Virus record (IMG/VR): IMGVR_UViG_3300012931_000759
Span: 248,001-312,000 of that record
Length of the DNA stretch: 64,000 nt
Reading direction: 5' to 3' (one strand)
The notes beneath the pieces are model-generated. The model was not told the DNA's origin. It made no database searches and saw only the letters and a program-made list of their open reading frames with translations. The translations under genes were made by a program, and so were the position numbers. Positions 28,405 through 52,343 of this stretch are shown piece by piece (position 1 is the stretch's first letter; every line of letters starts with the position of its first letter).

Positions 28405-29337
28405 ATGGATTTTGTGGTAATGTTCGACAAGAAATTTATGGTCGAGGGTCTTGTCTGCGTGTCTTCGATACTTGAGTATGGGCCGGACGCAAAGGTGTTC
28501 GTCCTATGCTTAGACCAGGAAGTGGACAAAATTGTCCAGCGGCATCTGTCGTCCGATCGCGTCGTTTGCATCCAACTCCTGGAGCTGGAGTACAAATACC
28601 CGGCCATAGCGGCCACCAAACCGTCAAGGCCGTGGGCTCCTTACACCCAGTCGCTGAAGCCCTTCCTGCCCGAGTACATCTTCAATACCCACGGAACCAA
28701 GGCGTTAACATACGTCGATTCGGACATGCTGTTCTGGGGCGATTGTAGTGAAATCGATCGCGAGATGGGTGACTGCTCCTTCATGGTGACCTCTAGGGGG
28801 CAGGACCCCCCTCCGGACTACGGGTATTTCAACGGGGGTTGCTTCTCTTGCCGCGACGACCGGAACTGCCGCTTGTTCCTAACCTGGTGGCAGGATCGGT
28901 GTGTGGAATGGTGCCTGTGGCAGACTGGCCCTAACGGAGCGTTTGGCGAGGAGGGGTACTTGAACATCATTGTTACTGAGCCGAATAGGTTTGGTGGCAT
29001 ACACGTGTCGAGGCATCCCGGCATTAATCTTGCTCCTTGGAACGTAAAAATGCATAAGCTTGAGAGTTGGAACGGAGGTTTTGTGGTAGATGGCCATTTC
29101 CCGCTAGTATGCTACCATTATCAGGGATTCGGCGGTATCAAATTTCCTTCCGCGATGCCGGTGGATATGATGTTCAAGAAACTCACTGCCCTATATGCCC
29201 CGTACCGCGACAAGCTGTCCGCTACAACCAAGGTGACGGCAGCCGTCCTGCCTCCGGAAAACATGGCACTCGATGGGCGGAAGATTTACCAGGAAGGCGG
29301 TGTTTACAGGAAAAGGATGAGGGCCAACCTCCTGTAA
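28405..29337 (+). CDS. Putative GT-A glycosyltransferase (paralog of 35941 and 36783)
   Basis: Start at ATG 28405. YVDSDMLFW (DxD), FNGG, WQDRCVEWC, HPGINLAPWN and YHYQG are shared with two downstream paralogs. Confidence 0.75.
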   Translation: MDFVVMFDKKFMVEGLVCVSSILEYGPDAKVFVLCLDQEVDKIVQRHLSSDRVVCIQLLELEYKYPAIAATKPSRPWAPYTQSLKPFLPEYIFNTHGTKALTYVDSDMLFWGDCSEIDREMGDCSFMVTSRGQDPPPDYGYFNGGCFSCRDDRNCRLFLTWWQDRCVEWCLWQTGPNGAFGEEGYLNIIVTEPNRFGGIHVSRHPGINLAPWNVKMHKLESWNGGFVVDGHFPLVCYHYQGFGGIKFPSAMPVDMMFKKLTALYAPYRDKLSATTKVTAAVLPPENMALDGRKIYQEGGVYRKRMRANLL

Positions 29338-29339
29338 AA

Positions 29340-29710
29340 ATAGGGAAAACACAAAGACTTCCAAATACACAACCGACCGTTTAAAAAGGAGTAATCTTCC
29401 CTTTTTTCTTTGTTTCTGCTGTCAAAAATCTATCAATAGATTGGCATTAAGGGCAAGATGCGACCTAGGATCAAACCACAGCTTGTAAACAAATGTATCC
29501 ATTGTACTTGCAAGGTTATCTCTTCGCGATGTGATGAATGCCTTAGATACCAGCAGTGCTGTAGTTTTTTTTTTGAGCGTTTGGGAGCGCAACGGGACGT
29601 TACAAAGGGAACGTGGAGCAGGCAGTTGCCCTGTCCAAATTGAATGATGTCTCGATTCCAAAGGCGATACAGTGGTGTCGAGAAAACCGTTTCAGGATCT
29701 ACATTCCTAG
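29340..29710 (+). pseudogene. Decayed zinc-ribbon + HTH gene (endonuclease-associated type)
   Basis: Three successive frames give CFCCQKSINRLALRARC / CIHCTCKVISSRCDEC / LSKLNDVSIPKAIQWCRENRF. AT-rich, with a T10 run at 29565-29574. Confidence 0.35.
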
Positions 29711-29783
29711 GGAATCCTTGGAGATTTGGTATTTCATGGGTTTTCTTGTCTGTGAAATGCTATTGCTACAAATGGGGCCCACA

Positions 29784-29969
29784 ATGAGCGAATTGTCTAA
29801 GTATGCGGAACGAAAGCAGATTAACATCCGGTTGGAATTAGAACTCCACGATTTTCTAGTAGAGTACGCCAGGCAGAACTACAAAACCGTCACGGCCGTC
29901 GTGCGTGAGATGATAGCCGCCCTCTACCGACAGCACCAGGCGGCACAGAAGACTGCGGACGATGAATAG
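29784..29969 (+). CDS. Ribbon-helix-helix (Arc/CopG-like) DNA-binding protein
   Basis: KQINIRLELELHDFLVEYARQNYKTVTAVVREMIAALY fits the beta-alpha-alpha RHH pattern. The start is more likely 29784 (or 29772) than 29613. Confidence 0.7.
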   Translation: MSELSKYAERKQINIRLELELHDFLVEYARQNYKTVTAVVREMIAALYRQHQAAQKTADDE

Positions 29970-30203: not shown

Positions 30204-32474
30204 ATGAAAGTAAGATGGCACACAATGGCCGGCACCAACCATTCGTGGGCGTTTGTAGCCCAGGCCTTGGCACGGGCGATGAAACAGAGTGGTCATTCTG
30301 TGTTCATCAAATCGACAAACGGTCTAGAGCATTTTCCCGAAGACCTGAAGCCTCTTCTTCTGCCGGGCTATCACAGCCACCCCTCGTTACCAGAGGTTGC
30401 CTTCCTTGGCGAAAAGGGCATCACCAACTCCTTGTCTGATATTCCCAGTTGTGACATAAGAGAGTCTCCAGACCAGAACAGGCCATACGACCTGGAACTC
30501 GCCTACACCATCCTCTACCAGATACCGCGTCGGTTCTATGCCGAATCGGCATGTAGAATGGTTATTTGGAACTTCGAGAGTTCAATCATGCCCCCTGGAT
30601 GGCAGATGTATCATCGCGGCGTGGATTACATCCTACCATCCAGCCAGTACTCCTCAGATATTTTCCTCCAGAATGGTGTACCGGCCTCGAAACTTGTAGT
30701 TGTGCCGCATGGCGTGTACCGTGAGATGTTCCACCCCGGCATTCCGCCGTTCAAACTTCACACACAGAAGCGGATCAAGTTCCTACACAACGCAATCCCA
30801 CACCACCGCAAGCTCCATGAACGCGTCATCGGGGCGTATCTTGACGCATTCACCGGGGACGACGACGTGTGCCTGGTGCTGAAGACCAAGTTCCTCCAGC
30901 CTTCCAAGGACAAGCCCTTCGAGGTCGACGTGCGCGAAATCCTGGAACGGAAACTGAAAGGCTGCCCGAATCCGCCCGAGATCGAGGTGATCACATCCTT
31001 CGTCCCCGATATCGGATCGCTCTACACTGCCTGCGATGCGGTCGTCAGTATGAGCTCGTGTGAGGGCTATTGTCTTCCTTTGCTTGAGGCCTTGGCTTGC
31101 GGAAGTGTAGTTATCGCGCCCCGGCATGGCGGCCAACTTGATTTCCTGGATGACAGGAATGCGCTACTCGTGGACACTGGCGAGATGAAGGCTCCCTTGA
31201 GTATGCAGTACTGGACGCATGCCCCGGAGGCCGTCGTGGGCGACCCTAGCGAGAGGCATTGCGCCGAACTCATGCGGCGCGTATACGCCGATCCGGCGGG
31301 GGAAAAGGCGCGCGTCGCCGAGGCAGCTCGCGTGACAACCGAGCGGTTCACGTGGGAGGCGGCAGCCAAACAGATCGTCGACCTGGCCGAGACTCGCATG
31401 ACCGAAAAGGCAATTTCTCCGTCGCCCCGCAAGAGAAGCGTCCTGTACGTGGTGCCCTACGACATGGCCGGTGGCGGCGAAATGTGGGTACGCGAGACCA
31501 TCAAACGCCTCGACAAGAGCCGGTACGAGCCGAGCGTTGTGTTTCCGCTGGGAGCGAGGCCCGAGCTGGTCGCCCTGTTCAGCGACCTCGGGGTGCCATG
31601 CGACGACCTGAGGAACCAAGGGACAGGCAATGCGCTGAAGTGTATGATCGAGTCCGGCAAACCTGACATCGTCCATTTCTACAACAGCCTACAGGTCTAC
31701 AGCCTCCTTATGCGCACGATCCAGGAGGGTGCGTGGGGAGGCAAGCTGGTCGAGACCGTACACAGCGAACTGATGTGGCCGGACTCGATGATGAAGGTCG
31801 CCGCACGACGCGGCGTCTCCATGATCGTCGGCGTCTCCGAGACCATCTGCGCGCGACTTGCGCGCCTCGGCAATCCGAATGTCAGGCACCTTCCGCAGCA
31901 GGTCGCATGGGACCGCTTCTCCGTCCCGAGGGGCAAGGAGGTTCTCGGAGAGATGGGGTTACCCACCGACAGGTTTACTGTGGGTACGGTGGCGCGCCTC
32001 TCGCCCGAGAAGAACATCCCGATGGTCCTGGCCTGCGCCAGGGCGATGCCCGACGCGCTGTTCGTGGTCGTGGGTGAGGGCCCGCAGGCCACAGTCCTGA
32101 ATGGAATGGCTTCCGGCCTCGCAAACGTGGTGTTCGCCGGACGGCGATCCGACGTCGAACGGTTCTATGCCGCCTTCGACGTCCTGCTTCTACCATCCAC
32201 CATGGAGGGTCTGCCGCTCACGATACTCGAGGCGATGGCGGCCGGGACACCGGTCGTTGCCTCCAAGGTCGGTGCCATTCCCGAGGTGGTGTCCGACGGA
32301 ACGAACGGTTTCCTGGCCTCCAAGGCGCAGGAGTACGTGGCGGCCTTGGAGAAGCTGCGCGACCCGGCATCCAGGGATAGCATGGGCAAAAATGCCATGG
32401 CGCTGGCTGACATCCTGAGAATGCGCGGCAACACCCAGAACATTAATACATTGTACGACTCGCTATTCAGGTAA
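30204..32474 (+). CDS. Double GT4-type (GT-B) glycosyltransferase
   Basis: Two GT-B units: SSCEGYCLPLLEALACG and PSTMEGLPLTILEAMAAGTPVVAS, each with the EX7E motif. Confidence 0.9.
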   Translation: MKVRWHTMAGTNHSWAFVAQALARAMKQSGHSVFIKSTNGLEHFPEDLKPLLLPGYHSHPSLPEVAFLGEKGITNSLSDIPSCDIRESPDQNRPYDLELAYTILYQIPRRFYAESACRMVIWNFESSIMPPGWQMYHRGVDYILPSSQYSSDIFLQNGVPASKLVVVPHGVYREMFHPGIPPFKLHTQKRIKFLHNAIPHHRKLHERVIGAYLDAFTGDDDVCLVLKTKFLQPSKDKPFEVDVREILERKLKGCPNPPEIEVITSFVPDIGSLYTACDAVVSMSSCEGYCLPLLEALACGSVVIAPRHGGQLDFLDDRNALLVDTGEMKAPLSMQYWTHAPEAVVGDPSERHCAELMRRVYADPAGEKARVAEAARVTTERFTWEAAAKQIVDLAETRMTEKAISPSPRKRSVLYVVPYDMAGGGEMWVRETIKRLDKSRYEPSVVFPLGARPELVALFSDLGVPCDDLRNQGTGNALKCMIESGKPDIVHFYNSLQVYSLLMRTIQEGAWGGKLVETVHSELMWPDSMMKVAARRGVSMIVGVSETICARLARLGNPNVRHLPQQVAWDRFSVPRGKEVLGEMGLPTDRFTVGTVARLSPEKNIPMVLACARAMPDALFVVVGEGPQATVLNGMASGLANVVFAGRRSDVERFYAAFDVLLLPSTMEGLPLTILEAMAAGTPVVASKVGAIPEVVSDGTNGFLASKAQEYVAALEKLRDPASRDSMGKNAMALADILRMRGNTQNINTLYDSLFR

Positions 32475-32488: not shown

Positions 32489-35400
32489 ATGGATGAGATT
32501 AACCCTAAGTTGTGGGACGGCGACTTCGGGGAATTGCGCGAAGGTGAGGGCGAGGGCCGTCAAGGTTGCCGCTTGGAGGGGTCGAGCGCTTCCGCGAACG
32601 TGCCACTTATCGGCATTGAGCCCTGGTCGGTGTACCGCTTCCAAGTAACCTTAAGGAACGCGGGTGGAAGCGGTCGGCTGTGCTTTAATCTGCGCGTCAA
32701 TGGCCAGGATTTTCCGCCCGCCATGCTCGACTGTCCAGCCGACCCGCTTTGGCGCGTGTTCGAGGTCGATGTGGCGACAGCCCGGTGCGTCAAGGGTACA
32801 CCGGGCATCTTTAGGATCCATCGTCTTCCCGTGGATTCGGGAACGATGCTCGTAGGGCGTATCGCCGCAGAAAAGTTGCCGCATGGCGTCGGGCCCACAC
32901 CTGAACCTAGGTTAGTGGCCACGGAAGGCAACATCGGCATCTGTGCGCCCGTCGCAAAATACGCTGTGTTGATGGAGGAAGGTATGGATGAGTTCGACCA
33001 GCAATTTTGGCGCGGTAAGAACCTTGTCGCCAAGAAGGACGATCGGGGCGCAAAATGTCTCTCCATGGAAGGCGACAGATCCATCATATTCGTGCCCGTC
33101 AAGGTAGAGCCGAACTCGGTGTACAGGTGCCAACTCGACCTAAGGCGCGAGACCGGGAATGGCAAAATCTACTGTAACCTCTACGCCAACCGAAGTTTTG
33201 ATTTCCCACACATCTCCCTCGCGTGCGAGCTGGGCAGCTGGGGAACCTACGACATCCAGGTCAGGACCGGGACTTTTCCGCCCAACCTCCCCATTGTGCT
33301 GAGGTTGTGGCGGTCGCCTGCGGGAACCGGATCCCTGCTCGTGAAGCGCATAGCGCTCGAGAAGCTGCCGCCGGACGCGCCTGCCGAGGAGCCGAAACTG
33401 GTGGTGTCCTCGTCTGTCGAACGGCTTATGGTGGTCCTTCCGCCGACGGTGGAAAAGACGATCCCTGCGCCCAAGGGGATACGCGTGCCGCGCGCAAACA
33501 AGCCGCCCCCGATCGAAGTACTTCCACACCGCAAAAGAGTGCCCGACCTGCCCAACAGGCTGTCCTACTCGCGTTTTGAGCGGGAACCCACAAAAGTCCT
33601 CGTTGTGTCAGAGATGGGGGACGAGACGGCTATGCGGGAGGCCTTCGAGGCCATAGGTATCTCATGCGAGGGCGCAGCCATGGCCGGAAATGTATCGCGG
33701 TTCCCCGACATGGCGCAGAGCGCCGCCGCGAACTGGATCCACTTTCACATCCGCAGAGGAACACTCTTAACTCCGGAGATTGTCGATGGGATCAGAAACG
33801 CCAGGCCGGGCATCGCAGTCACTATGTGGGCGCAACCCGGATGGCCGCTTTTCGACGCGGCATTGCTCCGGGTTCTCCGCGCCGCCGATCTTGCGCTGGT
33901 TGGTGGTGACATCGAGCTAGCCACCTGGCGCGCTGCTGGATGCTTTAACGTCGAACTGTGGGATCCGGGTGCTACAAACTTGTCCCCTTCCGGCGAGGAT
34001 TCTGGATACGATGTGGTAGCGGTGTCAGACGATCCGTCCGATCCACATTCAGATCTTGCTGCGGCGCTGGCCGGGAAGTTTGGCGCGCGTGCCGTCTTCG
34101 CGCCTAGGGAGGATGTTGGCAGGCGTGTTGCCCTGGGCGGAGTCGGTGTAGCAGTGTTCGCAGACCAATGGCCATCACGCAGCCTGTTCGGCCTCATGGC
34201 CACCGGAATCCCAGTGGTTGCTAGGCGGTCCCTTGGCACCATGGAGTGGTGTCGGAACGGAATCGACCTTCGCCTTTTCGACACCCCTGAGGAATGCGTA
34301 GCTATCGTTTCCCAGCTGCTAGACTGTCCCGAGGTCGCGCAGACTATTGGCGCGGAAGGGGCAGCCCTGGCTGCCACCCATTCGCGGATCGCACGCGCCA
34401 AGGAGCTAGCCACACGGCTCGGGTGCTTTGAGACAACCATGACCTGCTTTCCCAAGGACCGGACATCCTACACGTTCGGACATGTGCTCTGTGCCATGAA
34501 AGCGGCACCCCCGGAGCTGATGGGCCGCAGTGGCAACGGGGAGGTGGATGTTTCAACCGCTTCGTTCGCCGAATGCCGCGATCTTGAAGCCAAGATCATC
34601 AGATCCAACCCGGATCTATTACATATCCATCTGGAGGACGAGGACGACGGTCTGCCTTGGCGCGACCTGCTGATAGATCTCCGCAGGCGCATGCCGCATA
34701 TGCTGGTTACAGTGTGGCATCATGGTGGCCAGGGGGTCGACAGGAGGATGATGGATCTGCGTTTCCTGGTTGACCACATGTTTGTCGGGGATACAGAATC
34801 GCTGGCACGCTACCGCGCGGAGTCTATCGTAGGCGTCGCGGAATGGAGTGCCGGGGTAGCCCCTTCGGAAAATCCTATAGCTTTCCGCGAGGCCTTGTAC
34901 ACCCTTGCCAAGAGTATGGGGACGAGAAGGGACACTTTCCTCAGGGGCGCAGACGGACAAATGGTTGACCTAACAGTGTTTATCGGCACCTGTAACCGGT
35001 ACGACCAGCTACGGAGAGCGGTCGAGACAGCGCTTGCCTCGGCAGGCAATCGAACAATAGAAATCATCGTGAACGATGCCGGATCCACCGATGGAACACA
35101 GGATTGGATGCGCAAGATGGCAGTCACCGACAAACGGATTGTTCCAATCTTCTCCGGTAAACGCACAAGTTTCACACAGGCCTTCAACGAGGCTCTACAG
35201 ATTACAAAAGGTAAGTACATCTGCTGGCTCAGCGACGATATAGTATCAGAGGGTCAGTCCCTATCCGACATGTGCTCAATTATGGACGAGATCGAACCCA
35301 TGGACATGGGCGGGTTCTGCGTACGCAACTCCTGGGGCTACGAGTACACAGTCAGGAAGGACACCGGATTCTATTTCCCGCCAGTTGGGTGTGTATACAC

Positions 35401-46481: not shown

Positions 46482-47239
46482 AGGGAATAGTTCTTGCTGG
46501 GGGCACAGGTTTGCGTTTGGGACCCTTGTCAAAGGTGACAAATAAGCACCTCCTTCCTGTCGGACCGGTTCCAATGCTATTTCATCCAATCAGCCAATTC
46601 CTCGAAAATGGTATCGAGGAAATCTGTGTAGTTTCAGGACTGTTTCACCTAGGATCTGTTGTGGAACTTCTTGGAAGTGGCAGCCGATACAGATGCCAAT
46701 TCACATACAAGGTCCAGGACGAGGCTGGAGGCATTGCTGAAGCCTTGCTACTTTGCCAAGATTTTGCGGGCGACAGCGATATTGCGGTTATTCTCGGTGA
46801 CAATATTTTCGGGGAATTGTTGGATTTCAATAGATCAGTTAAAGGAGGCGTCCTATACCTGAAAGAGGTTCCTGATCCTCACAGATTCGGCGTAGCGGAA
46901 GTCGACCACCTAAAGCGCCTGGTTGATATAGAGGAAAAGCCAGAGAATCCCAAAAGCAATCTTGCTATTACTGGAGCTTACCTATATTCGCCAGCTGTCT
47001 GGGAATTAGCTGGGCAAATTAGTAGGTCGGCGCGGGGCGAACTTGAAATTACGGATATCAATAAGGCATTGATTTGTAAAGGTATTGTCGACACATTTGA
47101 AATGGGAGGATGGTGGTCGGATGCTGGAACGCAAGAGTCGTTTCGCAAGGCCAACCAGGAGGTGTGGGACAACCTATGCCCACGGCTCATGGACAGGATT
47201 TTGGGCATGTCGAAGGCATGTCGGGAGGAAAAGCGATGA
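46478..47239 (+). CDS. rmlA: Glucose-1-phosphate thymidylyltransferase (short RmlA/SpsI type)
   Basis: MKGIVLAGGTGLRL, NKHLLPVG, ILGDNIF, SARGELEITD. Confidence 0.92.
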   Translation: MKGIVLAGGTGLRLGPLSKVTNKHLLPVGPVPMLFHPISQFLENGIEEICVVSGLFHLGSVVELLGSGSRYRCQFTYKVQDEAGGIAEALLLCQDFAGDSDIAVILGDNIFGELLDFNRSVKGGVLYLKEVPDPHRFGVAEVDHLKRLVDIEEKPENPKSNLAITGAYLYSPAVWELAGQISRSARGELEITDINKALICKGIVDTFEMGGWWSDAGTQESFRKANQEVWDNLCPRLMDRILGMSKACREEKR

Positions 47240-48111
47240 AAGTATCGGTGGTTATATCCGCATGCGACAACAGGGTCCACCTGTTTGAACGGGCTCTAGA
47301 CACCTGGGCGTCCCAGACAATGCCCAAGGATGAGTTCGAACTGTTGGTTGTAGACGACGCAGAACGCGAAAGCCTCCGCCAGCTGTGCCAAACTAAGGGT
47401 CCTGCCTGTGGGCTAAATATACGGTTCATTAGGATCGACAAGTCCAGGAGTGTGATCCCGGTAAAAAGCTTCATTCCGGTGCTGACGAACAACGTGGGTT
47501 TCCGCAAGGCGGCTGGGGAAGTTGTAGTCGTGACCGGCCCGGAGACGCTACAAGCATCCACCAACATGGAGATGGCCTGGACTATGCGCGATAGAACCGA
47601 ATGTGCCTATGGCCTCGTTTTCCGGGCGAACGCGTCCGCGACAGACTATATCGCTAAGGGATGGGACCGACTGAGGCGCCTTCCGATAGAGCACCTTCTC
47701 CAGATCCCCGGGGCGAAGGACAACTGCGTCACGATGTCACCTCACCCACCGGCCTATTGGTACTTTATGAGCGTTGCTAAAAAATATGTCGAGCAGATAG
47801 GTGGAGTTGATGAACGATTTCTTGGTGGCCTCTGTGCAGAGGACGACGACTTCTCCAATCGCATGAGGATGGCCGGAGTTGAGCCTGTGTTCGAGCACAG
47901 AATTGTGGGGATCCACCAGGATCACTCAAGAGAAGACCACAACGACGGCGTCCACATCAACCGGCGCGAAGGTCTAGGGTACAACCTCTGGGTTCATAAT
48001 TTCAGTCTAATGCAGGACAACTTGGTCAAAGGGGATCCAGTTGCGAACCAAGGGTATGATTGGGGAAGCTCTGACTTGACCATCATCGACGAGACGTACG
48101 GAGGCCGATGA
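47236..48111 (+). CDS. GT2 glycosyltransferase
   Basis: MKVSVVIS..ELLVVDD; GGVDERFLGGLCAEDDDFSNRM. Confidence 0.85.
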   Translation: MKVSVVISACDNRVHLFERALDTWASQTMPKDEFELLVVDDAERESLRQLCQTKGPACGLNIRFIRIDKSRSVIPVKSFIPVLTNNVGFRKAAGEVVVVTGPETLQASTNMEMAWTMRDRTECAYGLVFRANASATDYIAKGWDRLRRLPIEHLLQIPGAKDNCVTMSPHPPAYWYFMSVAKKYVEQIGGVDERFLGGLCAEDDDFSNRMRMAGVEPVFEHRIVGIHQDHSREDHNDGVHINRREGLGYNLWVHNFSLMQDNLVKGDPVANQGYDWGSSDLTIIDETYGGR

Positions 48112-48686
48112 TGAAGCTACACATGGGATGTGGGACAGTGTACCTCAAGGGGTACATAAATATAGACGGCGCCCCTGACTATCTTTCCGACGAGTGCCCT
48201 ACGGAACTTCTGACCCAGAATGCAACTGAGTTCGACCGGTACTATAAACAAGAGTTCTGTACACTTCCAGGGCATGTGGTTGCCGACCTGAAGCACAACC
48301 TGATGGAGCCACTGCCATTCCCCAATGGGTTCGTGGACGAGATCGTAATGTACCAGGTCTTGGAGCATATCCCAGTTTACGAGGTTGGGAAACTCGTGGC
48401 TGACATCGCGCGTGTGCTCAGGATCGGGGGCGCATTTATCGTGAGCGTTCCGGACATCAAAGAAACCGCGAAGTTGTTGGCGGCTGCCCAAACCGAGCAG
48501 GAAGAGGATTGGGCTATCAGACTCCTACACGGAACACAGAGAAACCAGTGGTCCCACCATTTCTGCGGATATGTAACTCGCACTCTCAAATCGCTCCTTG
48601 CGCAGCATGGCTTCTCGACCTTTGAGGATATGCCGAGCATCAACTTTTACCCAGTCATACACCTAAAGGCAATCAAGGGGGGATAA
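48108..48686 (+). CDS. SAM-dependent methyltransferase (type 11-like)
   Basis: KLHMGCG..GYINID, LPFPNGFVDEIVMYQVLEHI, RVLRIGG..VSVPD. Confidence 0.85.
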   Translation: MMKLHMGCGTVYLKGYINIDGAPDYLSDECPTELLTQNATEFDRYYKQEFCTLPGHVVADLKHNLMEPLPFPNGFVDEIVMYQVLEHIPVYEVGKLVADIARVLRIGGAFIVSVPDIKETAKLLAAAQTEQEEDWAIRLLHGTQRNQWSHHFCGYVTRTLKSLLAQHGFSTFEDMPSINFYPVIHLKAIKGG

Positions 48687-49655
48687 ATGAGAGTCATGGT
48701 AACAGGTGGAACAGGCTTTCTCGGCACGCATGTCGTCGCCGAACTTGAAAATCGTGGACATATAGTTGATGCTTTGCCAACTCCTAGTGAAAATTCCGGG
48801 TACGACCTTACAAATATGTGCGATGTCGTAGCTGCATTCTCGCTCCCGATACCGCCCGATGCCGTCATCCACCTGGCCGCCAAGTGCGGAGGCATTGGGG
48901 CAAACATGCGTCGGCCGGGGGAGTTCTTTAGGGACAACATCTTAATGGGTGTTAATACAATAGATGTTGCGAAAACCTGTGGCATCAGGAAGTTCGTGTG
49001 CGTGGGTACTATATGCGCTTATCCGGAGCACACACCGGTGCCGTTCAAGGAGACTGATCTTTGGAAAGGATATCCGGAGCCCACAAATGGAGCATACGGT
49101 ATCGCCAAGAAGGCACTTATGGTCATGCTACAGTCATACCGGCAGCAGTATGGCTTTAACGGGATCTACCTCCTACCGGTCAATCTCTATGGGCCTGGAG
49201 ATCATTTCTCCCTGGAGGACTCGCATGTCATCCCAGCAATGATCCGTAAATTCGACACGGCTAAGGACGAGGGAAGGCCCACCGTCTCCTTGTGGGGCAC
49301 TGGCAGTGCCTCCAGGGAATTCCTGTACGTCAAGGACGCAGCTAAAGGGATCGTTGACGCACTGGAACGCTACGATGGGCCGGAGCCGGTAAATCTCGGG
49401 AATGGGCACGAAATCTCGATCCGTAAACTGGCGGAGAAGATACAGGACACGGTCGGCTACAATGGGATCATCGAGTGGGATATCTCCAAGCCCGACGGCC
49501 AGCCGCGCCGGTGTCTCGACACGAGTCGCGCCAAGGAGCTGTTTGGTTTTGAGGCCAAGACGCCATTCCTGCTCGGGTTGATCGAGACATACGAATGGTG
49601 GCTGGCCAATAAGGCCGTCATCCTGGCGCAAGAAAATATGTCGCATAAGGAATAA
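48687..49655 (+). CDS. fcl: GDP-L-fucose synthase
   Basis: VTGGTGFLG, HLAAKCGGIGAN, GYPEPTNGAYGIAK, SHVIPAMIRKF, KPDGQPRR. Confidence 0.95.
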   Translation: MRVMVTGGTGFLGTHVVAELENRGHIVDALPTPSENSGYDLTNMCDVVAAFSLPIPPDAVIHLAAKCGGIGANMRRPGEFFRDNILMGVNTIDVAKTCGIRKFVCVGTICAYPEHTPVPFKETDLWKGYPEPTNGAYGIAKKALMVMLQSYRQQYGFNGIYLLPVNLYGPGDHFSLEDSHVIPAMIRKFDTAKDEGRPTVSLWGTGSASREFLYVKDAAKGIVDALERYDGPEPVNLGNGHEISIRKLAEKIQDTVGYNGIIEWDISKPDGQPRRCLDTSRAKELFGFEAKTPFLLGLIETYEWWLANKAVILAQENMSHKE

Positions 49656-49657
49656 TT

Positions 49658-50650
49658 ATGAAACATACAGCACTCATTACTGGAATAGGTGGACAAGATG
49701 CTAGTTTTATGGCCGAATTCCTTTTGGAAAAAGGGTATCGCGTCATTGGTTTGATTCGCCGTAACGCCATGCGCAGTCTGGGAAACGCGGCTCATCTTGA
49801 GAACGACATCGACATCGAGGAGGGAGACATCACGGATGCCACCTCGATGATGCGTATCATTCAGCGCTCTAGACCGCATGAGATCTATAATCTGGCGGCC
49901 CAGTCCCATGTAGGGACCAGTTTTGAGCAACCGGTGGCCACGGTGAACATCGACACCCTCGGGGTGGTTAATATCCTTGAGGCGATTAAGACCCTCGGGT
50001 TCTCAACCCGGATCTTCCAGGCCTCGACAAGCGAGTTGTGGGGTGACTCTCTTCCACCACAGAACGAAGAAACCGTCATGCGTCCGCGCAGTCCATATGC
50101 CATAGCAAAACTTGCGTCGCATTGGTTCATCAGGATGTATCGCGAGGCGTATAGGATGTACTGCTGCGCCGGTATTACCCATAACCATGAATCTGAGCGG
50201 CGCGGTCCGCTTTTCGTGACCAGGAAGATTTCGCTTGGGGTGGCCAACGTTCTGAAAGATCCATCGTACAGGATCAAACTGGGCAACATTGACGCCGCTA
50301 GGGACTGGGGCTACGCCCCGGATTTTGTAGAGGGGTTCTGGCTATCTCTACAGCAGCCAAAACCCGACGATTTTGTCTTCGCCACTGGCGAGATGCACAC
50401 AGTTGGGGAGTTTGTAGAGAAAGCCTTCGCTAGGGCTGGAATAGAGGACTGGGGCACGTACGTCGAGGTCGACCGTTTCATGATGCGCCCATTGGAGGTT
50501 GAGAGCTTGTGCGGGGATCCATCCAAGGCCAAAGCGACACTTGGGTGGGAGCCGAAAGTCAAGTTCGAGCAGCTCGTCAAGATCATGGTTGAGTACGACT
50601 GTAAGCTGCTCGGTGTCGAAGATAAATTGCCGAAAATAGAGGGAAAGTAA
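49658..50650 (+). CDS. gmd: GDP-mannose 4,6-dehydratase
   Basis: ALITGIGGQD, YNLAAQSHVGTSF, QASTSELWG, PRSPYAIAK, NHESERRG, RDWGYAPD. Confidence 0.96.
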   Translation: MKHTALITGIGGQDASFMAEFLLEKGYRVIGLIRRNAMRSLGNAAHLENDIDIEEGDITDATSMMRIIQRSRPHEIYNLAAQSHVGTSFEQPVATVNIDTLGVVNILEAIKTLGFSTRIFQASTSELWGDSLPPQNEETVMRPRSPYAIAKLASHWFIRMYREAYRMYCCAGITHNHESERRGPLFVTRKISLGVANVLKDPSYRIKLGNIDAARDWGYAPDFVEGFWLSLQQPKPDDFVFATGEMHTVGEFVEKAFARAGIEDWGTYVEVDRFMMRPLEVESLCGDPSKAKATLGWEPKVKFEQLVKIMVEYDCKLLGVEDKLPKIEGK

Positions 50651-51447
50651 TGAGCCAACGACACCATTCGACCGTCGGAGTGTATATGCCAGCGCACAAC
50701 GTTGTAGCATACATAGGCGACGCCATCAAGAGCATTATCGCCCAAGATTTCAAGGACTGGGAACTTGTGGTGCTGGATGACGCCTCGGATGACGGCACTT
50801 TCGAGGCGGCCATGAAGGTGGCAAACGACCATTGTTGTGTTCTGCGCAACGACACCCGTTGCGGCCTGATCGGAAAGCTGAAGAACGAGAGCATTGACCG
50901 CCTTTACAAACCTGAGTTTATCTGTCACGTGGGAGCGGACGATACGATCCCACCCGACTGCCTGTCATCGTTTGTGTCATTTATGCGTGTTAATCTAGAC
51001 CTGGTGGCGGCCTGTGGTACATTCGACTGTTTCGATGACGCAGGGAATAAGTGGATGATGCCGCACGTCCTGGCAGACAAGGGCTTCAGCAGAGAGAGAC
51101 TTTTGCGATACATGAATTTCTACCCACAAAGATTTTATAGGAAGGAAGCTGTTGAAATAGTTGGAGGATACTCTAACACCCTGTCGTCAGCGGTTGACTA
51201 CGATTTAGCTCTTAGGCTCGACGAAAAGTTCCCGGGCAGACTGGGACGACTTGAGGGAAAAATCACCTATCACTACCGGCAGCACCCCTTACAGATTTCG
51301 AGGGCAGCTAGGTTGGAGCAAGATCTGAATGCCAAGGTAGCGCTCCAAACGGCTCTTGATCGTCGCAAAACCGGACAGGAGGTAGTGAACGACAAGCCGC
51401 CTTTCCAGCTTAGGGAGCAAGAGGGGCACTTCATATGGGGAAAGTGA
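50650..51447 (+). CDS. GT2 glycosyltransferase
   Basis: VYMPAHNV..AIKSIIAQ..WELVVLDDASDDGT; HVGADD; AVDYDLALR. Confidence 0.9.
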   Translation: MSQRHHSTVGVYMPAHNVVAYIGDAIKSIIAQDFKDWELVVLDDASDDGTFEAAMKVANDHCCVLRNDTRCGLIGKLKNESIDRLYKPEFICHVGADDTIPPDCLSSFVSFMRVNLDLVAACGTFDCFDDAGNKWMMPHVLADKGFSRERLLRYMNFYPQRFYRKEAVEIVGGYSNTLSSAVDYDLALRLDEKFPGRLGRLEGKITYHYRQHPLQISRAARLEQDLNAKVALQTALDRRKTGQEVVNDKPPFQLREQEGHFIWGK

Positions 51448-52343
51448 TGAGGAAAATCCTTGTTTGCGGTTCAGCTGGATTTCTGATGTCGAACATGATG
51501 CGGTACATGTTATATCGCACAAAGGATTACGAGTTCGCCAGCATCGACCCATTGCGGAACAAGGAGGACCAGCGCAATATCTACATGCACAAGAGGCATT
51601 CATTCCATGTGGGTGATGTCGGCAATCCCGAACTTCTGGATAGGGTAGTACGCATCGAGAATCCGGACATTGTGGTTATAGGTACCGGAACGCCGCAACC
51701 TATTTACTCTAATGGTGCGGCTGTCGAGGATATTGTTCTCCCGACAGCCTCTGTATGCGACCTTTCCAAGATCTACGGCTTCCGTGTTGTGCGGCTAGTA
51801 CCAGATGTGGATATTACAGATATGGGTAGCAGATCCCTGTGGAATCATGTCGAGACCATGGTGTTTGATGTGAGGGGCACAGTTTTACGTATGCCAGTAT
51901 GTTTTGGAAGGAGGGGTCGTGGCTTGTTCGAACAGGCGTTGTGTACAATCCTCTCAGGGCATGCTTGTTCAGGATGGAAACTAGATACTAGGAAAAGATG
52001 GTACGCCTATGCAGAGGATGTGGCTTCTATGCTCTGGTTTATTATGGAGAATCCAACTGTGCGCATTCCTGGACCACCTCCGATCCCAAACATAGTCAGG
52101 ATGCCAGCCCTTGGATGCGCCAATACAGCGGATATGATTGCTATGGCGCATCCTGTGTTGGGGTGGGGACAACCCTTTACATATAATATATATATGGGAA
52201 AGGAAGAGCCAATATTACCAGGCTGGATGCCAGACTCTAAAGATCTTATTGATGCTGTTTTAAAAACAGCAAAATGGTATACAATGAATAAGTGGATTTT
52301 TGATACAGAAGGCTACATATCCCCTCTATCCGGAGGACGTTAA
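51447..52343 (+). CDS. Degenerate NAD-dependent epimerase/dehydratase (RmlB-like fold)
   Basis: KILVCGSAGFL, FHVGDVGN, KRWYAYAEDVA; the catalytic YxxxK motif is not found. Confidence 0.65.
   Translation: MRKILVCGSAGFLMSNMMRYMLYRTKDYEFASIDPLRNKEDQRNIYMHKRHSFHVGDVGNPELLDRVVRIENPDIVVIGTGTPQPIYSNGAAVEDIVLPTASVCDLSKIYGFRVVRLVPDVDITDMGSRSLWNHVETMVFDVRGTVLRMPVCFGRRGRGLFEQALCTILSGHACSGWKLDTRKRWYAYAEDVASMLWFIMENPTVRIPGPPPIPNIVRMPALGCANTADMIAMAHPVLGWGQPFTYNIYMGKEEPILPGWMPDSKDLIDAVLKTAKWYTMNKWIFDTEGYISPLSGGR

What the first reader, a model, noticed from the sequence alone, without database searches (positions are those of the whole stretch)
28405..52343. Large exporter-less glycan factory next to the tail genes: putative virion glycosylation system
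Seen in sequence: 10 GT genes (at least 12 GT domains: GT4 x2, several GT2, GT47, three paralogous GT-A, CgeB-like), rmlA/rmlB/fdtA/DegT, gmd/fcl and three methyltransferases. No Wzx/Wzy/Wzz, ABC exporter, initiating phosphoglycosyl transferase or oligosaccharyltransferase is present, and none of these genes shows obvious transmembrane segments. Established: chloroviruses encode Gmd/GDP-fucose synthase, Mimiviridae have nucleotide-sugar clusters that glycosylate particles, and some actinophage virions are glycosylated by phage GTs. Inference: these are soluble, lipid-carrier-independent enzymes building a complex methylated glycan directly on virion proteins in the cytoplasm, a scale unusual for a tailed phage. 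Modification of DNA or of the host surface are alternatives.
Basis: partly seen in the sequence, partly recalled or inferred. Interest (0 to 1): 0.85.

Follow-up and report, generated by a model that had tools for sequence, protein, structure and literature searches.

The report
Conserved glycan factory in huge phages
A 340-kb uncultivated phage carries a real 24-kb block of soluble sugar-making and sugar-linking enzymes with no export machinery; its relatives keep a block at the same spot, so it is a lineage trait, but whether it coats the virus particle or remodels the host surface is undecided.

Summary
Window 28405-52343 encodes 10 glycosyltransferase (GT) genes with 12 GT domains, two nucleotide-sugar routes (RmlA/RmlB/FdtA/DegT; Gmd/Fcl) and three methyltransferases. 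It has no convincing membrane-spanning segment and no initiating transferase, flippase, polymerase, ABC exporter or oligosaccharyltransferase.

The contig is a 340,392-bp tubulin-encoding myovirus, not a chimera: independent assemblies span both junctions. Six related huge-phage contigs carry sugar/GT genes at the homologous position. The one seen on its tail side lies between tail-fibre genes and the island; five show the island abutting tubulin. Four to five genes beside tubulin recur and diverge in step with replication genes; the rest vary.

No exporter-like protein occurs in the 150 kb (44%) of the genome I could reach.

The virion-glycosylation reading is plausible (about 0.4) but unproven. 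Missing membrane segments do not discriminate. Bacterial homologues of part of the island sit in sugar loci, one beside a weak Wzy-like gene. Comparable clusters in jumbo cyanophages are read in the literature as host-surface modifiers.

Verdict: new variant of a known kind, moderately interesting.

The parts
28405..29337 (+). GT8-like GT-A glycosyltransferase, paralogue A. It starts 17 nt after the last tail gene.
   Evidence: 35-40% identical to paralogues B and C; invariant DxD motif YxDxDM; family assigned by Atlas features and structure on paralogue C; no Pfam, NCBIfam or PHROG hit.
29613..29969 (+). Small ribbon-helix-helix/Arc-like ORF inside an 867-bp gap. Possible regulator; probably not part of the chemistry.
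   Evidence: PHROG 876/582, E=9e-6 to 2e-3. The same region differs in relative L024.
30204..32474 (+). Two-domain GT4 (GT-B) glycosyltransferase, 756 aa.
   Evidence: Pfam Glycos_transf_1 E=3e-41 in two stretches, plus Glyco_transf_4. 68% identical orthologue in the 442-kb relative L024.
32489..35938 (+). 1149-aa multidomain enzyme: two N-terminal carbohydrate-binding-module (CBM)-like beta-jelly-rolls, a CgeB-like GT-B domain and a GT2 domain.
   Evidence: Pfam Glyco_trans_1_2 (residues 562-640) and Glycos_transf_2 (829-948). The search found the N-terminal 345 aa in 12 protein clusters, four of them on 306-442 kb huge-phage-sized contigs. AF2 model pLDDT 77. Foldseek hits to CBM22 tandem, GH101 CBMs and CenC-like CBMs of phage tail proteins, E about 1e-9 but TM about 0.3.
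35941..36780 (+). GT8-like GT-A glycosyltransferase, paralogue B.
   Evidence: 57% identical to paralogue C; DxD invariant; 68% orthologue in L024.
36783..37637 (+). GT8-like GT-A glycosyltransferase, paralogue C.
   Evidence: Atlas: nearest clusters carry Glyco_transf_8/Nucleotid_trans and are mostly Uroviricota; structural TM 0.9 to bacterial glycosyl transferases. No match in GenBank phages.
37634..38293 (+). Class I SAM methyltransferase (MT1).
   Evidence: Pfam Methyltransf_25/11/23/12. Start overlaps the upstream stop as ATGA.
38299..38721 (+). HNH/endonuclease VII-type homing endonuclease (selfish insert, not glycan chemistry).
   Evidence: PHROG 1035/3118, E=3.5e-15. Absent at this position in L024.
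38733..39620 (+). GT2-like glycosyltransferase, 295 aa.
   Evidence: Pfam Glycos_transf_2, 24.4 bits against a cutoff of 23.3. 49% orthologue in L024. 32% identical to a GT2-methyltransferase fusion in bacterial locus L028.
39880..40821 (+). Exostosin/GT47-like GT-B glycosyltransferase (weak assignment).
   Evidence: Pfam Exostosin_GT47, 29.5 bits, below the cutoff of 33.4; RXYLT1_C E=1e-4. 70% orthologue in L024.
40818..41486 (+). Probable O-methyltransferase (MT2), weak assignment.
   Evidence: Only a PDB sequence hit to catechol O-methyltransferase 4p58, E=1.5e-3. No Pfam hit. Absent from L024.
41483..42220 (+). GT-A (GT2-like) fold protein, 245 aa.
   Evidence: Atlas structural matches to GT2 clusters (TM 0.62-0.65) and to a domain of a Nucleocytoviricota multi-GT protein (TM 0.79). 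No HMM hit. 54% orthologue in L024.
42217..42624 (+). FdtA/WxcM-type dTDP-4-keto-6-deoxyhexose 3,4-ketoisomerase.
   Evidence: Pfam FdtA, E=2e-43.
42621..43709 (+). DegT/DnrJ/EryC1-family PLP aminotransferase for nucleotide sugars.
   Evidence: Pfam E=1e-81. Best NCBIfam hits are PseC, ArnB and LegC types, all below cutoff. 74% orthologue in L010.
43709..44422 (+). GIY-YIG homing endonuclease 1 (selfish insert between DegT and RmlB).
   Evidence: Pfam LEM-3_GIY-YIG, E=7e-12. Start overlaps the DegT stop. DegT and RmlB are adjacent without it in L010 and L024.
44419..45357 (+). RmlB-type dTDP-glucose 4,6-dehydratase.
   Evidence: NCBIfam TIGR01181, 343.8 bits against a cutoff of 365. Pfam Epimerase and GDP_Man_Dehyd.
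45357..46481 (+). GIY-YIG homing endonuclease 2 with HTH/NUMOD3 domains (selfish insert between RmlB and RmlA).
   Evidence: Pfam. 40% identical to endonuclease 1. Absent in L010.
46478..47239 (+). RmlA-type glucose-1-phosphate thymidylyltransferase.
   Evidence: Pfam NTP_transferase, E=2.5e-45. NCBIfam rmlA, 194 bits, below cutoff.
47236..48111 (+). GT2-like glycosyltransferase (weak assignment).
   Evidence: Pfam GT2, 18 bits, below cutoff. NCBIfam EpsD N-terminus, E=7e-12. Orthologues 70% in L010 and 52% in L011.
48108..48686 (+). Class I SAM methyltransferase (MT3), part of the recurring core (seen in three of five relatives).
   Evidence: Pfam Methyltransf_11/23. Orthologues 66%, 53% and 48% in L010, L011 and L012.
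48687..49655 (+). Fcl-type GDP-L-fucose synthase (GDP-4-keto-6-deoxymannose epimerase/reductase), recurring core.
   Evidence: NCBIfam GDPFucSynFcl, E=8e-83, 278 bits, below the cutoff of 500. Orthologues 88%, 61% and 47%.
49658..50650 (+). Gmd, GDP-mannose 4,6-dehydratase, recurring core.
   Evidence: Pfam GDP_Man_Dehyd, E=4e-112. NCBIfam gmd, 359 bits against a cutoff of 415. Orthologues 91%, 74% and 66%. 48-50% identical to the Gmd of cyanophages and a 735-kb phage.
50650..51447 (+). GT2 glycosyltransferase, 265 aa; a recurring core GT of the lineage and candidate for the first, acceptor-specific transfer (inference).
   Evidence: Pfam, 68 bits. 115 orthologue clusters at 42-83% identity with a sharp family edge. 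Orthologue beside the epimerase-like gene and near tubulin in L010, L011, L012 and L021.
51435..52343 (+). Epimerase-like pseudo-enzyme: Rossmann GxxGxxG kept, catalytic YxxxK lost. Aligned orthologues in three relatives; last gene before tubulin.
   Evidence: Pfam Epimerase matches the N-terminus only. The alignment with three orthologues (L011, L012, L021) and Fcl shows FGRRGR-type sequence where Fcl has YGIAKK.

Best explanation
This is a phage-owned, lineage-conserved glycan-biosynthesis island of an uncultivated 340-kb myovirus that encodes a tubulin.

Shown:
- It encodes a complete route from glucose-1-phosphate to a dTDP-3-amino-3,6-dideoxyhexose (RmlA, RmlB, FdtA-type 3,4-ketoisomerase, DegT-type aminotransferase).
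- It encodes the two-step route from GDP-mannose to GDP-L-fucose or a related 6-deoxyhexose (Gmd, Fcl).
- It encodes ten soluble Leloir glycosyltransferases with twelve catalytic domains and three SAM methyltransferases.
- It has no membrane component.

Inferred:
- In the infected cell's cytoplasm these enzymes assemble a methylated hetero-oligosaccharide.
- They do so directly on an acceptor that is conserved across the lineage, most likely a virion protein (capsid, tail or fibre).
- The recurring GT2 next to tubulin would make the first, acceptor-specific linkage.
- The variable GTs would build an outer part that differs between related phages.
- This would parallel the conserved-core, variable-decoration logic of chlorovirus capsid glycans.
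- With no N-acyltransferase visible, the amino sugar may stay free or be N-methylated, as in mycaminose-type pathways.

The acceptor is not identified.
For: - Enzyme inventory.
- Soluble proteins and no PGT, Wzx, Wzy, ABC or OST in the window.
- No polytopic membrane protein in contig 189,968-340,392, by gene tables with Pfam and hydropathy scans. The scan is validated on a bacterial locus.
- Phage ownership: near-identical collinear contigs from ENA ERZ27227667 and Logan SRR6436070 span both junctions.
- Position: the island starts 17 nt after the last tail gene and ends 38 nt before tubulin. The same tail-fibre-to-GT order occurs in a 442-kb relative.
- Five relatives with tubulin 48-83% identical all have sugar/GT genes directly upstream of tubulin.
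- Core genes co-diverge with the backbone: Gmd 91/74/66% and GT2 69/55/48/47%, against tubulin 80/69/60/61% and DnaB 75/57/46/43%.
- 115 GT2 orthologue clusters, apparently co-resident with tubulin on at least 31 contigs as judged from matching contig lengths.
- A conserved core across phages that probably infect different hosts argues for a conserved, hence possibly phage-encoded, acceptor (inference).
- Precedents: glycans on the C-termini of capsid and tail-tube subunits of Mycobacterium phages (Freeman 2023, as summarised in PMC12619734). Chlorovirus and Megavirinae use multidomain GTs, with a conserved glycan core in chloroviruses and clade-specific clusters in Megavirinae (PMC7826918, PMC9614988, PMC10117803). 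That these giant-virus enzymes are soluble and accompanied by virus-encoded Gmd/GMER is from my own knowledge.
Against: - No acceptor was identified. No Ser/Thr-rich tails or collagen-like repeats occur in the tail and baseplate proteins surveyed, and the capsid gene was not reached.
- The GT8-like paralogue gave no match at all in the phage collection, which includes mycobacteriophages. The core GT2 gave only weak 23-31% hits to Listeria, Enterococcus, Acinetobacter and unnamed gut phages, none a mycobacteriophage.
- The nearest named families of the GT2s (EpsE, TuaG, WcaA, PglI) act on lipid-linked acceptors.
- Bacterial homologues of the GT8-like/FdtA/DegT/GT2-methyltransferase sub-module lie in nucleotide-sugar loci; one of the four also has a weak Wzy-like protein and an 11-segment membrane protein. 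Descent from lipid-carrier pathways is therefore possible but weakly shown.
- Soluble GTs are the norm in such pathways, so absence of membrane segments does not discriminate.
- The tandem CBM-like modules suit a polysaccharide acceptor as well as a glycoprotein.
- Adjacency to tail genes is matched by adjacency to replication genes on the other side. Promoter and terminator scans gave only chance-level hits.
- 56% of the genome is unseen.
Confidence: 0.4

Rival explanations
1. Host-surface remodelling. The phage supplies sugars and soluble GTs that act on the host's own undecaprenyl-phosphate-linked intermediates at the inner face of the membrane. The host's initiating transferase, flippase/polymerase or ABC exporter and ligase then put the altered O-antigen, capsule, EPS, teichoic acid or S-layer glycan on the cell. 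This would block superinfection, or stop progeny from sticking to infected or lysed cells.
For: - This is the standard reading of comparable clusters in jumbo phages (Iyer et al. 2021, PMC7824862, section 3.4.10; S-SCSM2R, S-SCSM1 and P-SSM2 in PMC12801897).
- Best named relatives of the GT2s are EpsE, TuaG, WcaA, PglI and EpsD.
- In four bacterial MAG contigs, distant homologues (27-33% identical) of the GT8-like gene sit with some of FdtA, DegT and RmlA (not all in every locus). In L028 they also sit with a GT2-methyltransferase fusion, an 11-segment protein and a 9-segment protein that hits Wzy_C.
- By general knowledge, Fuc3N/Qui3N-type sugars are typical of O-antigens and S-layer glycans.
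- The phage carries 1299+ and 1523-aa beta-helix tailspike-like proteins, so a surface glycan is a likely receptor.
- Island content differs between relatives, as expected if it tracks host glycans.
Against: - No membrane step is encoded in the island, in 150 kb of this genome, or in the parts of six relatives' islands that were seen. A foreign multi-sugar glycan would therefore have to pass the host's Wzx, Wzy and ligase specificities.
- The core (Gmd, Fcl, GT2, methyltransferase, dead SDR) is inherited vertically. It is as conserved as replication genes across phages with tubulin down to about 60% identity. That is unexpected for genes tuned to different hosts' surface chemistry.
- Replacing an existing surface layer within one lytic cycle is slow (general reasoning).
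- The host-surface reading has not been tested experimentally for any jumbo phage in the papers read.
Confidence: 0.3
2. Another cytoplasmic acceptor. The glycan might go on a non-virion phage protein or a host protein. It might instead be a free or storage oligosaccharide, or the sugars might decorate a small molecule such as a secondary metabolite.
For: - RmlA/RmlB/3,4-ketoisomerase/aminotransferase plus a methyltransferase is also the gene set of mycaminose-type antibiotic sugars (own knowledge).
- Iyer et al. describe a second kind of jumbo-cyanophage cluster predicted to make a sugar-derived secondary metabolite (PMC7824862).
- No virion acceptor was found.
Against: - No polyketide, NRPS, halogenase or other aglycone-forming gene occurs in the window or the flanks seen.
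- Twelve GT domains are far more than known natural-product decorations need.
- Tandem CBM-like modules point to a polymeric glycan.
Confidence: 0.12
3. DNA hypermodification. The GTs decorate hydroxymethylated bases of the phage genome to evade restriction and CRISPR.
For: Phage GTs that put diverse glycans on DNA are known (Pyle et al. 2024, cited in PMC12619734). The island borders the replication module of tubulin, UvsW and DnaB.
Against: - No dCMP or dUMP hydroxymethylase, T4-type alpha/beta-GT family or other base-modifying enzyme was seen in the window or in 150 kb surveyed.
- The phage encodes ThyX and thymidylate kinase, meaning ordinary dTMP supply.
- By my own knowledge, known DNA glycosylation uses one to a few GTs, not twelve domains plus CBM-like modules.
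- 56% of the genome is unseen, so this is not excluded.
Confidence: 0.03
4. Artefact. The cluster is host DNA joined to a phage contig by misassembly, or the contig is a bacterial chromosome fragment.
For: Homologues of some genes are labelled as MAG proteins of Patescibacteria and Hodarchaeales. GC content dips to 0.48-0.53 at 44-52 kb.
Against: - Three other assemblies carry the same sequence. ENA k141_2537079 spans the 2302-aa tail protein through FdtA. Logan SRR6436070_18800 spans the double GT4 through tubulin to the ribonucleotide reductase, with identical spacing.
- Six related huge-phage contigs (206-442 kb where complete) have sugar/GT genes at the homologous position.
- The flanks are baseplate and tail genes on one side and tubulin, UvsW, DnaB and PrkA on the other.
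- The MAG labels are best explained by mis-binning of phage contigs.
Confidence: 0.01

Closest known systems
Glycan ('LPS' or 'capsular polysaccharide modification') gene clusters of jumbo cyanomyoviruses: P-SSM2 (15-gene cluster), S-SCSM1, S-SCSM2R (13 GTs among 22 genes). Sources: PMC7824862, PMC12801897.
   Same: - A large tailed phage carries a contiguous block of nucleotide-sugar enzymes (including Gmd and Fcl) and many GTs of several families.
- Content is polymorphic between related phages.
- The target has not been shown experimentally.
- Gmd here is 48-49% identical to Gmd of S-SCSM1, ACG-2014f and DSL-LC03.
   Different: - A different, uncultivated lineage. The only isolate with any detectable backbone similarity is Bacillus phage G at 25-28%.
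- The GT8-like paralogues have no match in GenBank phages.
- The island sits at a fixed locus between the tail-fibre module (seen in one relative) and tubulin (seen in five), with a vertically inherited core.
- It contains a CBM2-CgeB-GT2 giant enzyme found only on phage-sized contigs and a dead SDR.
- It has the FdtA/DegT amino-sugar branch. S-SCSM2R also lists an export porin (PgaA), which is absent here.
Mycobacteriophage virion O-glycosylation (Che8, Corndog, Myrna; Freeman et al. 2023, as summarised in PMC12619734).
   Same: Phage-encoded soluble GTs are proposed to glycosylate structural proteins in the cytoplasm without export machinery. This phage's baseplate J protein is distantly related to those of cluster C mycobacteriophages, including Myrna.
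   Different: - The GT8-like paralogue found nothing in the phage collection. The core GT2 found only weak 23-31% hits to Listeria, Enterococcus, Acinetobacter and unnamed gut phages, none a mycobacteriophage.
- By my own knowledge the mycobacteriophage systems have only a few GTs and rely on host nucleotide sugars. This island has 12 GT domains and its own two sugar pathways.
- Attachment to virion proteins is shown there and is untested here.
Autonomous glycosylation machinery of giant viruses: chlorovirus PBCV-1 (Gmd, GMER, A064R, A111/114R) and Megavirinae fibril glycan clusters. Sources: PMC7826918, PMC9614988, PMC10117803.
   Same: - Virus-encoded GDP-fucose branch and a 4,6-dehydratase plus aminotransferase route to amino-dideoxy sugars.
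- Soluble multidomain GTs and sugar methylation.
- A conserved core with clade-specific variation in content.
- No lipid carrier or export genes.
- One GT-A here has a fold match (TM 0.79) to a domain of a Nucleocytoviricota multi-GT protein.
   Different: - The host is bacterial, and the virus is a tailed phage rather than a member of Nucleocytoviricota.
- No sequence-level orthology was shown.
- Methyltransferases are separate genes, not fused to GTs.
- The glycan and its acceptor are unknown here.
Bacterial Wzx/Wzy-type surface-polysaccharide loci containing FdtA/FdtB (Fuc3N/Qui3N) modules.
   Same: Same sugar module (RmlA, RmlB, FdtA, DegT) with GT8-like and GT2-methyltransferase neighbours. 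Distant homologues at 27-33% identity were found together in four bacterial MAG contigs.
   Different: One of the four bacterial loci (L028) has polytopic membrane proteins, with 11 and 9 segments, the latter hitting Wzy_C at 31.4 bits. The other three showed none attributable to export. The phage island, and 150 kb around it, has none. No N-acyltransferase lies between FdtA and DegT in the phage.

Membership tests
Jumbo-phage glycan biosynthesis cluster (P-SSM2 / S-SCSM2R type; Iyer et al. 2021) | A contiguous cluster in a phage genome over 200 kb that combines NDP-sugar-forming enzymes with several paralogous or multi-family GTs. | tested here: met
   Contig of 340,392 bp. The 24-kb block has RmlA, RmlB, FdtA, DegT, Gmd, Fcl and 10 GT genes of GT2, GT4, GT8-like, GT47-like and CgeB-like types.
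Jumbo-phage glycan biosynthesis cluster (P-SSM2 / S-SCSM2R type; Iyer et al. 2021) | Gene content is polymorphic between related phages. | tested here: met
   Relatives L010, L011, L012, L020, L021 and L024 differ in sulfotransferase, SIS, adh_short, UDP-glucose dehydrogenase, TylF and extra methyltransferases.
Jumbo-phage glycan biosynthesis cluster (P-SSM2 / S-SCSM2R type; Iyer et al. 2021) | The product alters the host outer polysaccharide. | not testable with these tools
   Needs infected-cell glycan analysis. It is also untested for the cyanophage clusters in the papers read (PMC7824862, PMC12801897).
Phage virion protein glycosylation (mycobacteriophage type) | Glycan covalently attached to capsid or tail subunits. 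| not testable with these tools
   Needs virions and MS. No Ser/Thr-rich tails or collagen repeats in the surveyed tail proteins. The capsid gene was not reached.
Phage virion protein glycosylation (mycobacteriophage type) | GTs homologous to those of Che8, Corndog or Myrna. | tested here: not met
   tblastn of GT8C against 50,697 phage records gave no match. The core GT2 gave only 23-31% hits to Listeria, Enterococcus, Acinetobacter and unnamed gut phages, none a mycobacteriophage.
Giant-virus-type autonomous (lipid-carrier-independent) glycosylation machinery | Virus-encoded nucleotide-sugar synthesis plus soluble multidomain GTs and methyltransferases, without export genes. | tested here: met
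   Export genes are absent from the window and from 44% of the genome.
Giant-virus-type autonomous (lipid-carrier-independent) glycosylation machinery | A conserved core with clade-specific variable part. | tested here: met
   At gene level only. The core of MT3, Fcl, Gmd, GT2 and the dead SDR co-diverges with the backbone while the periphery varies. The glycan structure itself is untested.
Giant-virus-type autonomous (lipid-carrier-independent) glycosylation machinery | Glycan shown on the particle and synthesis shown to be independent of a lipid carrier. | not testable with these tools
   Biochemical question.
Wzx/Wzy- or ABC-transporter-dependent bacterial polysaccharide locus | Initiating phosphoglycosyl transferase (Bac_transf or Glycos_transf_4 type). 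| tested here: not met
   No such Pfam hit in any window protein or in the gene tables of the flanks.
Wzx/Wzy- or ABC-transporter-dependent bacterial polysaccharide locus | Flippase and polymerase, or ABC exporter with chain-length regulator (polytopic membrane proteins). | tested here: not met
   The hydropathy scan found none in contig 189,968-340,392. The only multi-segment protein is the 688-aa tail-module protein with 4 segments. The same scan detected 11- and 9-segment proteins in bacterial locus L028. Positions 1-189,967 were not examined.
OST-dependent protein glycosylation (PglB / PglL) | STT3- or Wzy_C-type oligosaccharyltransferase. | tested here: not met
   No hit in the window or the surveyed flanks.
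Phage DNA base glycosylation | A base hydroxymethylase or other acceptor-base-forming enzyme linked to the GTs. | tested here: not met
   None in the window or surveyed flanks. ThyX and thymidylate kinase are present. The unsurveyed 56% leaves this open.
GT-A glycosyltransferases (for the three paralogues) | Rossmann-like GT-A fold with a DxD metal/nucleotide-sugar motif. | tested here: met
   Atlas model pTM 0.92, with GT8/Nucleotid_trans neighbours. D105-x-D107 is invariant in five sequences.
Extended SDR nucleotide-sugar epimerase/reductase (for 51435-52343) | Catalytic Tyr-x-x-x-Lys. | tested here: not met
   The motif is replaced in the window protein and its three aligned orthologues (L011, L012, L021), while the GxxGxxG motif is kept. 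It is therefore filed as a pseudo-enzyme.

The most novel reading that the evidence does not exclude
A large clade of uncultivated huge phages is marked by a PhuZ-like tubulin: more than 1,100 tubulin homologues and at least 115 core-GT2 orthologue clusters. This clade may build a complex, methylated, clade-variable glycan directly on its own virion proteins in the bacterial cytoplasm, without lipid carrier, flippase or oligosaccharyltransferase. It would use self-made GDP-fucose and a dTDP-3-amino-3,6-dideoxyhexose. That would be the bacterial-virus counterpart of the chlorovirus and mimivirus glycosylation machinery: a conserved core laid down by the recurring GT2 next to tubulin, and an outer part that diversifies like an O-antigen.
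Probability: 0.35. Interest if true: 0.8.

Novelty: new variant of a known kind. Interest (0 to 1): 0.55.

Why it matters
- If the glycan ends up on the particle, tailed phages of bacteria would join giant eukaryotic viruses in having an autonomous, carrier-independent protein glycosylation system of high complexity.
- That has consequences for how such phages evade recognition, stick to surfaces and are detected.
- It would also offer a new set of soluble GTs for in-cell glycoengineering.
- If the glycan remodels the host envelope instead, it would be the first such case outside cyanophages. It would be inherited as a core trait of a widespread environmental phage lineage.
- Either way, the fixed locus, the conserved core and the many sequenced relatives make the question testable by heterologous co-expression, without culturing the phage.

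Tried and rejected
1. Megablast of the whole island against GenBank phages gave no match.
2. Sequence searches of the three paralogues and of 41483-42220 against Pfam, NCBIfam, PHROGs and PDB gave nothing usable. Only language-model and structure look-alikes and the DxD motif support the GT call.
3. I looked for a repeated regulatory motif of at least 14 nt, to fish out the rest of the contig in one scan. None exists in 92 kb.
4. Promoter and terminator scans around the island were at chance level, so nothing can be said on transcription units or timing.
5. No tRNA or Rfam family lies in the window.
The remaining 190 kb, and the capsid gene, were not reached. PHROG annotation of upstream proteins gave only tail-fibre and endolysin-like hints.
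7. A search for candidate acceptor features (Ser/Thr-rich stretches, collagen-like repeats, C-terminal tails) in surveyed structural proteins found nothing.
8. Bacillus phage G is the only isolate with a distant tubulin and baseplate J. It has no glycan genes near its tubulin, so it offers no model system.
9. The apparent frameshifts and overlaps at 40.7-42.6 kb and 43.4-44.4 kb are long spurious N-terminal ORF extensions in GC-rich DNA, not broken genes. I found no gene in the island that needs read-through of a stop.
10. I considered and rejected chimera or host origin.
11. Freeman et al. 2023 could not be read. It is cited only through other papers' summaries.

Full report
**What the window is.** All credible genes lie on the + strand.
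- Positions 11-28388 encode a myovirus tail and baseplate module. It includes a tail-tube initiator, a sheath initiator, baseplate J, a 2302-aa protein, a 955-aa protein with dockerin-type repeats and a 265-aa PKD-like protein.
- Positions 52381-63892 encode a tubulin/PhuZ-like GTPase, a UvsW-type helicase, DnaB, PrkA and DUF444.
- The window is positions 248,001-312,000 of a 340,392-bp contig, IMGVR_UViG_3300012931_000759, also named JGI Ga0153915_10000003.
- No close relative exists among 50,697 GenBank phage records. Baseplate J and tubulin are only 25-28% identical to those of Bacillus phage G.

**Checking the observation.** The block 28405-52343 holds 25 ORFs.
- Pfam, NCBIfam, PHROGs, PDB sequence search, the ESM Atlas and paralogue comparison confirm ten GT genes with twelve GT domains.
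- They also confirm RmlA, RmlB, FdtA, a DegT-family aminotransferase, Gmd, Fcl and three SAM methyltransferases.
- Some assignments are weak:
  - The GT47-like gene and one GT2-like gene score below the Pfam gathering thresholds.
  - One methyltransferase rests on a single PDB hit (E=1.5e-3).
  - The three paralogous GT-A proteins and the 245-aa GT-A are called only from fold and feature look-alikes. The paralogues also have an invariant DxD motif.
- All six sugar-nucleotide enzymes score below NCBIfam equivalog cutoffs, so exact products are inferred.
- A 19-residue hydropathy scan shows no convincing membrane segment in any island protein.
- No initiating transferase, flippase, polymerase, ABC exporter, ligase or oligosaccharyltransferase family appears in the window.
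  - One HNH and two paralogous GIY-YIG genes.
  - The start codons of the two GIY-YIG genes overlap the stop codon of the gene upstream.
- It also missed a small ribbon-helix-helix ORF.
- The last 'epimerase' has lost the SDR catalytic Tyr/Lys, in this phage and in its three aligned orthologues.
- The overlapping long ORFs at 40.7-44.4 kb are GC-rich N-terminal over-extensions, not frameshifts.

**Does the island belong to the phage?** Yes.
- Near-identical contigs from three other samples exist.
- ENA k141_2537079 runs from the 2302-aa tail protein into FdtA.
- Logan SRR6436070_18800 runs from the double GT4 through tubulin to the ribonucleotide reductase, with identical spacing.
- This removes the chimera and host-fragment objection.

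**Relatives.** The tubulin has more than 1,100 homologues, many on 100-440 kb contigs.
- Five relatives with tubulin 83, 68, 62, 60 and 48% identical all carry nucleotide-sugar, methyltransferase and GT genes immediately upstream of tubulin. In four of them a PrkA gene is visible downstream.
- A 442-kb relative shows the upstream half in the same order: fibre genes, double GT4, the 1129-aa CBM-CgeB-GT2 protein, two GT8-like genes, a methyltransferase, GT2, the GT47-like gene, the GT-A, FdtA, DegT and RmlB. It lacks the endonucleases.
- Content varies between relatives. Differences include a sulfotransferase, SIS isomerase, short-chain dehydrogenases, UDP-glucose dehydrogenase, a TylF methyltransferase and DUF2334.
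- A core next to tubulin recurs in most of the closer relatives. It comprises the methyltransferase, Fcl, Gmd, the 265-aa GT2 and the dead SDR. L021 retains only the GT2 and the SDR, and the 48% relative L020 has none of the five as orthologues.
- That core diverges in step with the backbone: Gmd 91/74/66% and GT2 69/55/48/47%, against tubulin 80/69/60/61% and DnaB 75/57/46/43%.
- The core GT2 has 115 orthologue clusters (42-83% identity) with a sharp family boundary.
- At least 31 of their contig lengths coincide with those of tubulin hits, including contigs of only 4-10 kb. This suggests, but does not prove, that the two genes are neighbours there too.
- Bacillus phage G has no glycan genes near its tubulin.

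**Rest of the genome.**
- I walked the contig with the capped look-ups from 189,968 to its end at 340,392. That is 150 kb, or 44%. I added about 10 kb on a sister contig.
- Gene tables with Pfam and hydropathy scans show no polytopic membrane protein other than a four-segment protein in the tail module. They also show no base-hydroxymethylating enzyme.
- ThyX and thymidylate kinase are present.
- Upstream lie two beta-helix tailspike-like proteins of 1299+ and 1523 aa.
- The remaining 190 kb, including the capsid gene, was not reached.

**The large multidomain enzyme.**
- The search found the first 345 residues of the 1149-aa protein in 12 protein clusters, four of them on 306-442 kb huge-phage-sized contigs.
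- They fold as two beta-jelly-rolls.
- These resemble carbohydrate-binding modules: CBM22 tandem, GH101 CBMs and CenC-like modules of phage tail proteins. E-values are about 1e-9 and TM-scores about 0.3 because of the two-domain geometry.
- This fits recognition of a glycan but does not identify the acceptor.

**Bacterial counterparts.**
- A scan of 185,579 species genomes with the GT8-like alignment found four MAG contigs: Saccharibacteria, Sangeribacter, Sphingobacterium and Bacillales.
- They carry distant homologues at 27-33% identity.
- There the gene sits with some of FdtA, DegT and RmlA homologues, though not all of them in every locus.
- In the Saccharibacteria contig it also sits with a GT2-methyltransferase fusion, an 11-segment protein and a 9-segment protein that hits Wzy_C at 31.4 bits against a cutoff of 31.7.
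- Part of the phage island may therefore derive from a bacterial surface-polysaccharide locus that has lost its membrane steps. The evidence is one locus of four, at sub-threshold score.
- The result also serves as a positive control for the hydropathy scan.

**Mechanism.**
- Shown: the island can make a dTDP-3-amino-3,6-dideoxyhexose and GDP-fucose or a related 6-deoxyhexose. It also provides twelve soluble GT domains and three methyltransferases.
- Inferred: a methylated hetero-oligosaccharide is assembled in the cytoplasm.
- I favour a phage-encoded acceptor, probably a virion protein, at about 0.4, for four reasons:
  - The pathway lacks every membrane step wherever I could look.
  - Its core is vertically inherited across phages that very likely have different hosts.
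  - It abuts the fibre genes.
  - The gene logic mirrors chlorovirus and Megavirinae systems (PMC7826918, PMC9614988, PMC10117803), and virion glycosylation is reported for Mycobacterium phages (Freeman 2023, via PMC12619734).
- The main rival, at about 0.3, is remodelling of host lipid-linked surface glycans using the host's own initiating and export machinery:
  - This is how comparable clusters in jumbo cyanophages are read (PMC7824862, PMC12801897).
  - It fits the EpsE/TuaG/WcaA/PglI-like GT2s and one Wzy-linked bacterial homologue locus.
  - It also fits the tailspike-like receptor-binding proteins.
  - Missing membrane segments do not discriminate, because GTs of such pathways are normally soluble.
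- Another cytoplasmic acceptor (about 0.12), DNA (about 0.03) and artefact (about 0.01) are less likely.

**Novelty and verdict.**
- Glycan clusters in jumbo phages are known, so the kind is not new. P-SSM2 has 15 genes and S-SCSM2R has 13 GTs among 22 genes. The claim of unusual scale is only mildly true.
- New here:
  - The uncultivated tubulin-bearing lineage.
  - The fixed locus with a vertically inherited core and a variable periphery.
  - The CBM2-CgeB-GT2 enzyme and the dead SDR.
  - Documented absence of membrane steps over 150 kb.
  - A tentative link to a bacterial Wzy-type locus.
- I rate it a new variant of a known kind, interest 0.55. The virion-glycosylation reading is partly supported and directly testable by co-expression and mass spectrometry.

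Noticed in passing
window 38299-38721, 43709-44422, 45357-46481; L010 5818-6606: Three free-standing homing endonuclease genes (one HNH, two paralogous GIY-YIG) sit between glycan genes. The start codons of the two GIY-YIG genes overlap the upstream stop codon. They are absent at the same sites in relatives L024 and L010. L010 instead has a LAGLIDADG gene between Fcl and Gmd, so the island is a hotspot for selfish endonucleases.
   Followed up: partly
window 51435-52343: An epimerase-like protein with aligned orthologues in three relatives, always just before tubulin where seen. It keeps the NAD(P)-binding GxxGxxG motif but has lost the SDR catalytic YxxxK. It may be a pseudo-enzyme or a nucleotide-sugar-binding partner of the adjacent core GT2.
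   Followed up: partly
window 58908-62144, 62723-63892; L005 11167-12636: A PrkA, DUF444 (YeaH) and SpoVR trio follows the replication genes. PrkA and DUF444 are seen in three relatives, and SpoVR in two of those. PrkA here is 1078 aa against about 650-680 aa in relatives. Its AAA domain is split by an insertion of about 365 aa with no Pfam hit, probably a divergent intein. Relative L012 has an annotated intein in PrkA.
   Followed up: partly
window 52381-53790: The PhuZ-like tubulin has more than 1,100 homologues in metagenomes, many on 100-440 kb contigs. It is a handy marker for this huge-phage lineage. One homologue (P0118, 814 aa) is annotated as a GT1-tubulin fusion.
   Followed up: partly
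L005 13855-18261: The ribonucleotide reductase large subunit (1468 aa) carries intein and LAGLIDADG domains. SpoVR in relative L011 also carries an intein.
   Followed up: no
window 9962-12028: A 688-aa protein inside the tail module has four strong hydrophobic segments (up to 2.72). It is the only multi-segment membrane-type protein in the 150 kb surveyed, and may be an ejection or membrane-penetration protein.
   Followed up: no
window 24707-27574: A 955-aa tail-region protein with dockerin-type calcium-binding repeats, 72% conserved in the 442-kb relative. Together with the 265-aa PKD-like protein it is the last structural gene before the island.
   Followed up: no
L014 1-3360 and 5420-9991 (contig 229,916-239,906): Two very large beta-helix (NosD/Beta_helix) proteins of 1299+ and 1523 aa, resembling tailspike depolymerases. 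They suggest the phage recognises or degrades a host surface polysaccharide.
   Followed up: no
window 29337-30204; L024 6200-7369: An 867-bp low-GC gap with a ribbon-helix-helix ORF separates the first GT8-like gene from the rest of the island. In the 442-kb relative the first GT8-like gene is replaced by an unannotated 389-aa ORF.
   Followed up: partly
P0017, P0171: Homologues of the phage tubulin and core GT2 are deposited as proteins of Patescibacteria and Hodarchaeales MAGs. These are most likely phage contigs mis-binned into cellular genomes.
   Followed up: no
L018 17264-20428 (contig about 335,259-338,423): Thymidylate kinase, an Amidase_2 plus PG_binding_1 endolysin and a long ThyX (488 aa, two Thy1 stretches) lie near the contig end. 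They indicate canonical thymidine supply.
   Followed up: partly
L028 1065-16243 (Saccharibacteria MAG contig CAYIUH010000001.1): A bacterial locus holds two GT8-like genes, a GT2-methyltransferase fusion, FdtA, DegT, an RmlA-like gene, an 11-segment protein and a Wzy_C-like 9-segment protein. It is the closest cellular counterpart of part of the phage island.
   Followed up: partly
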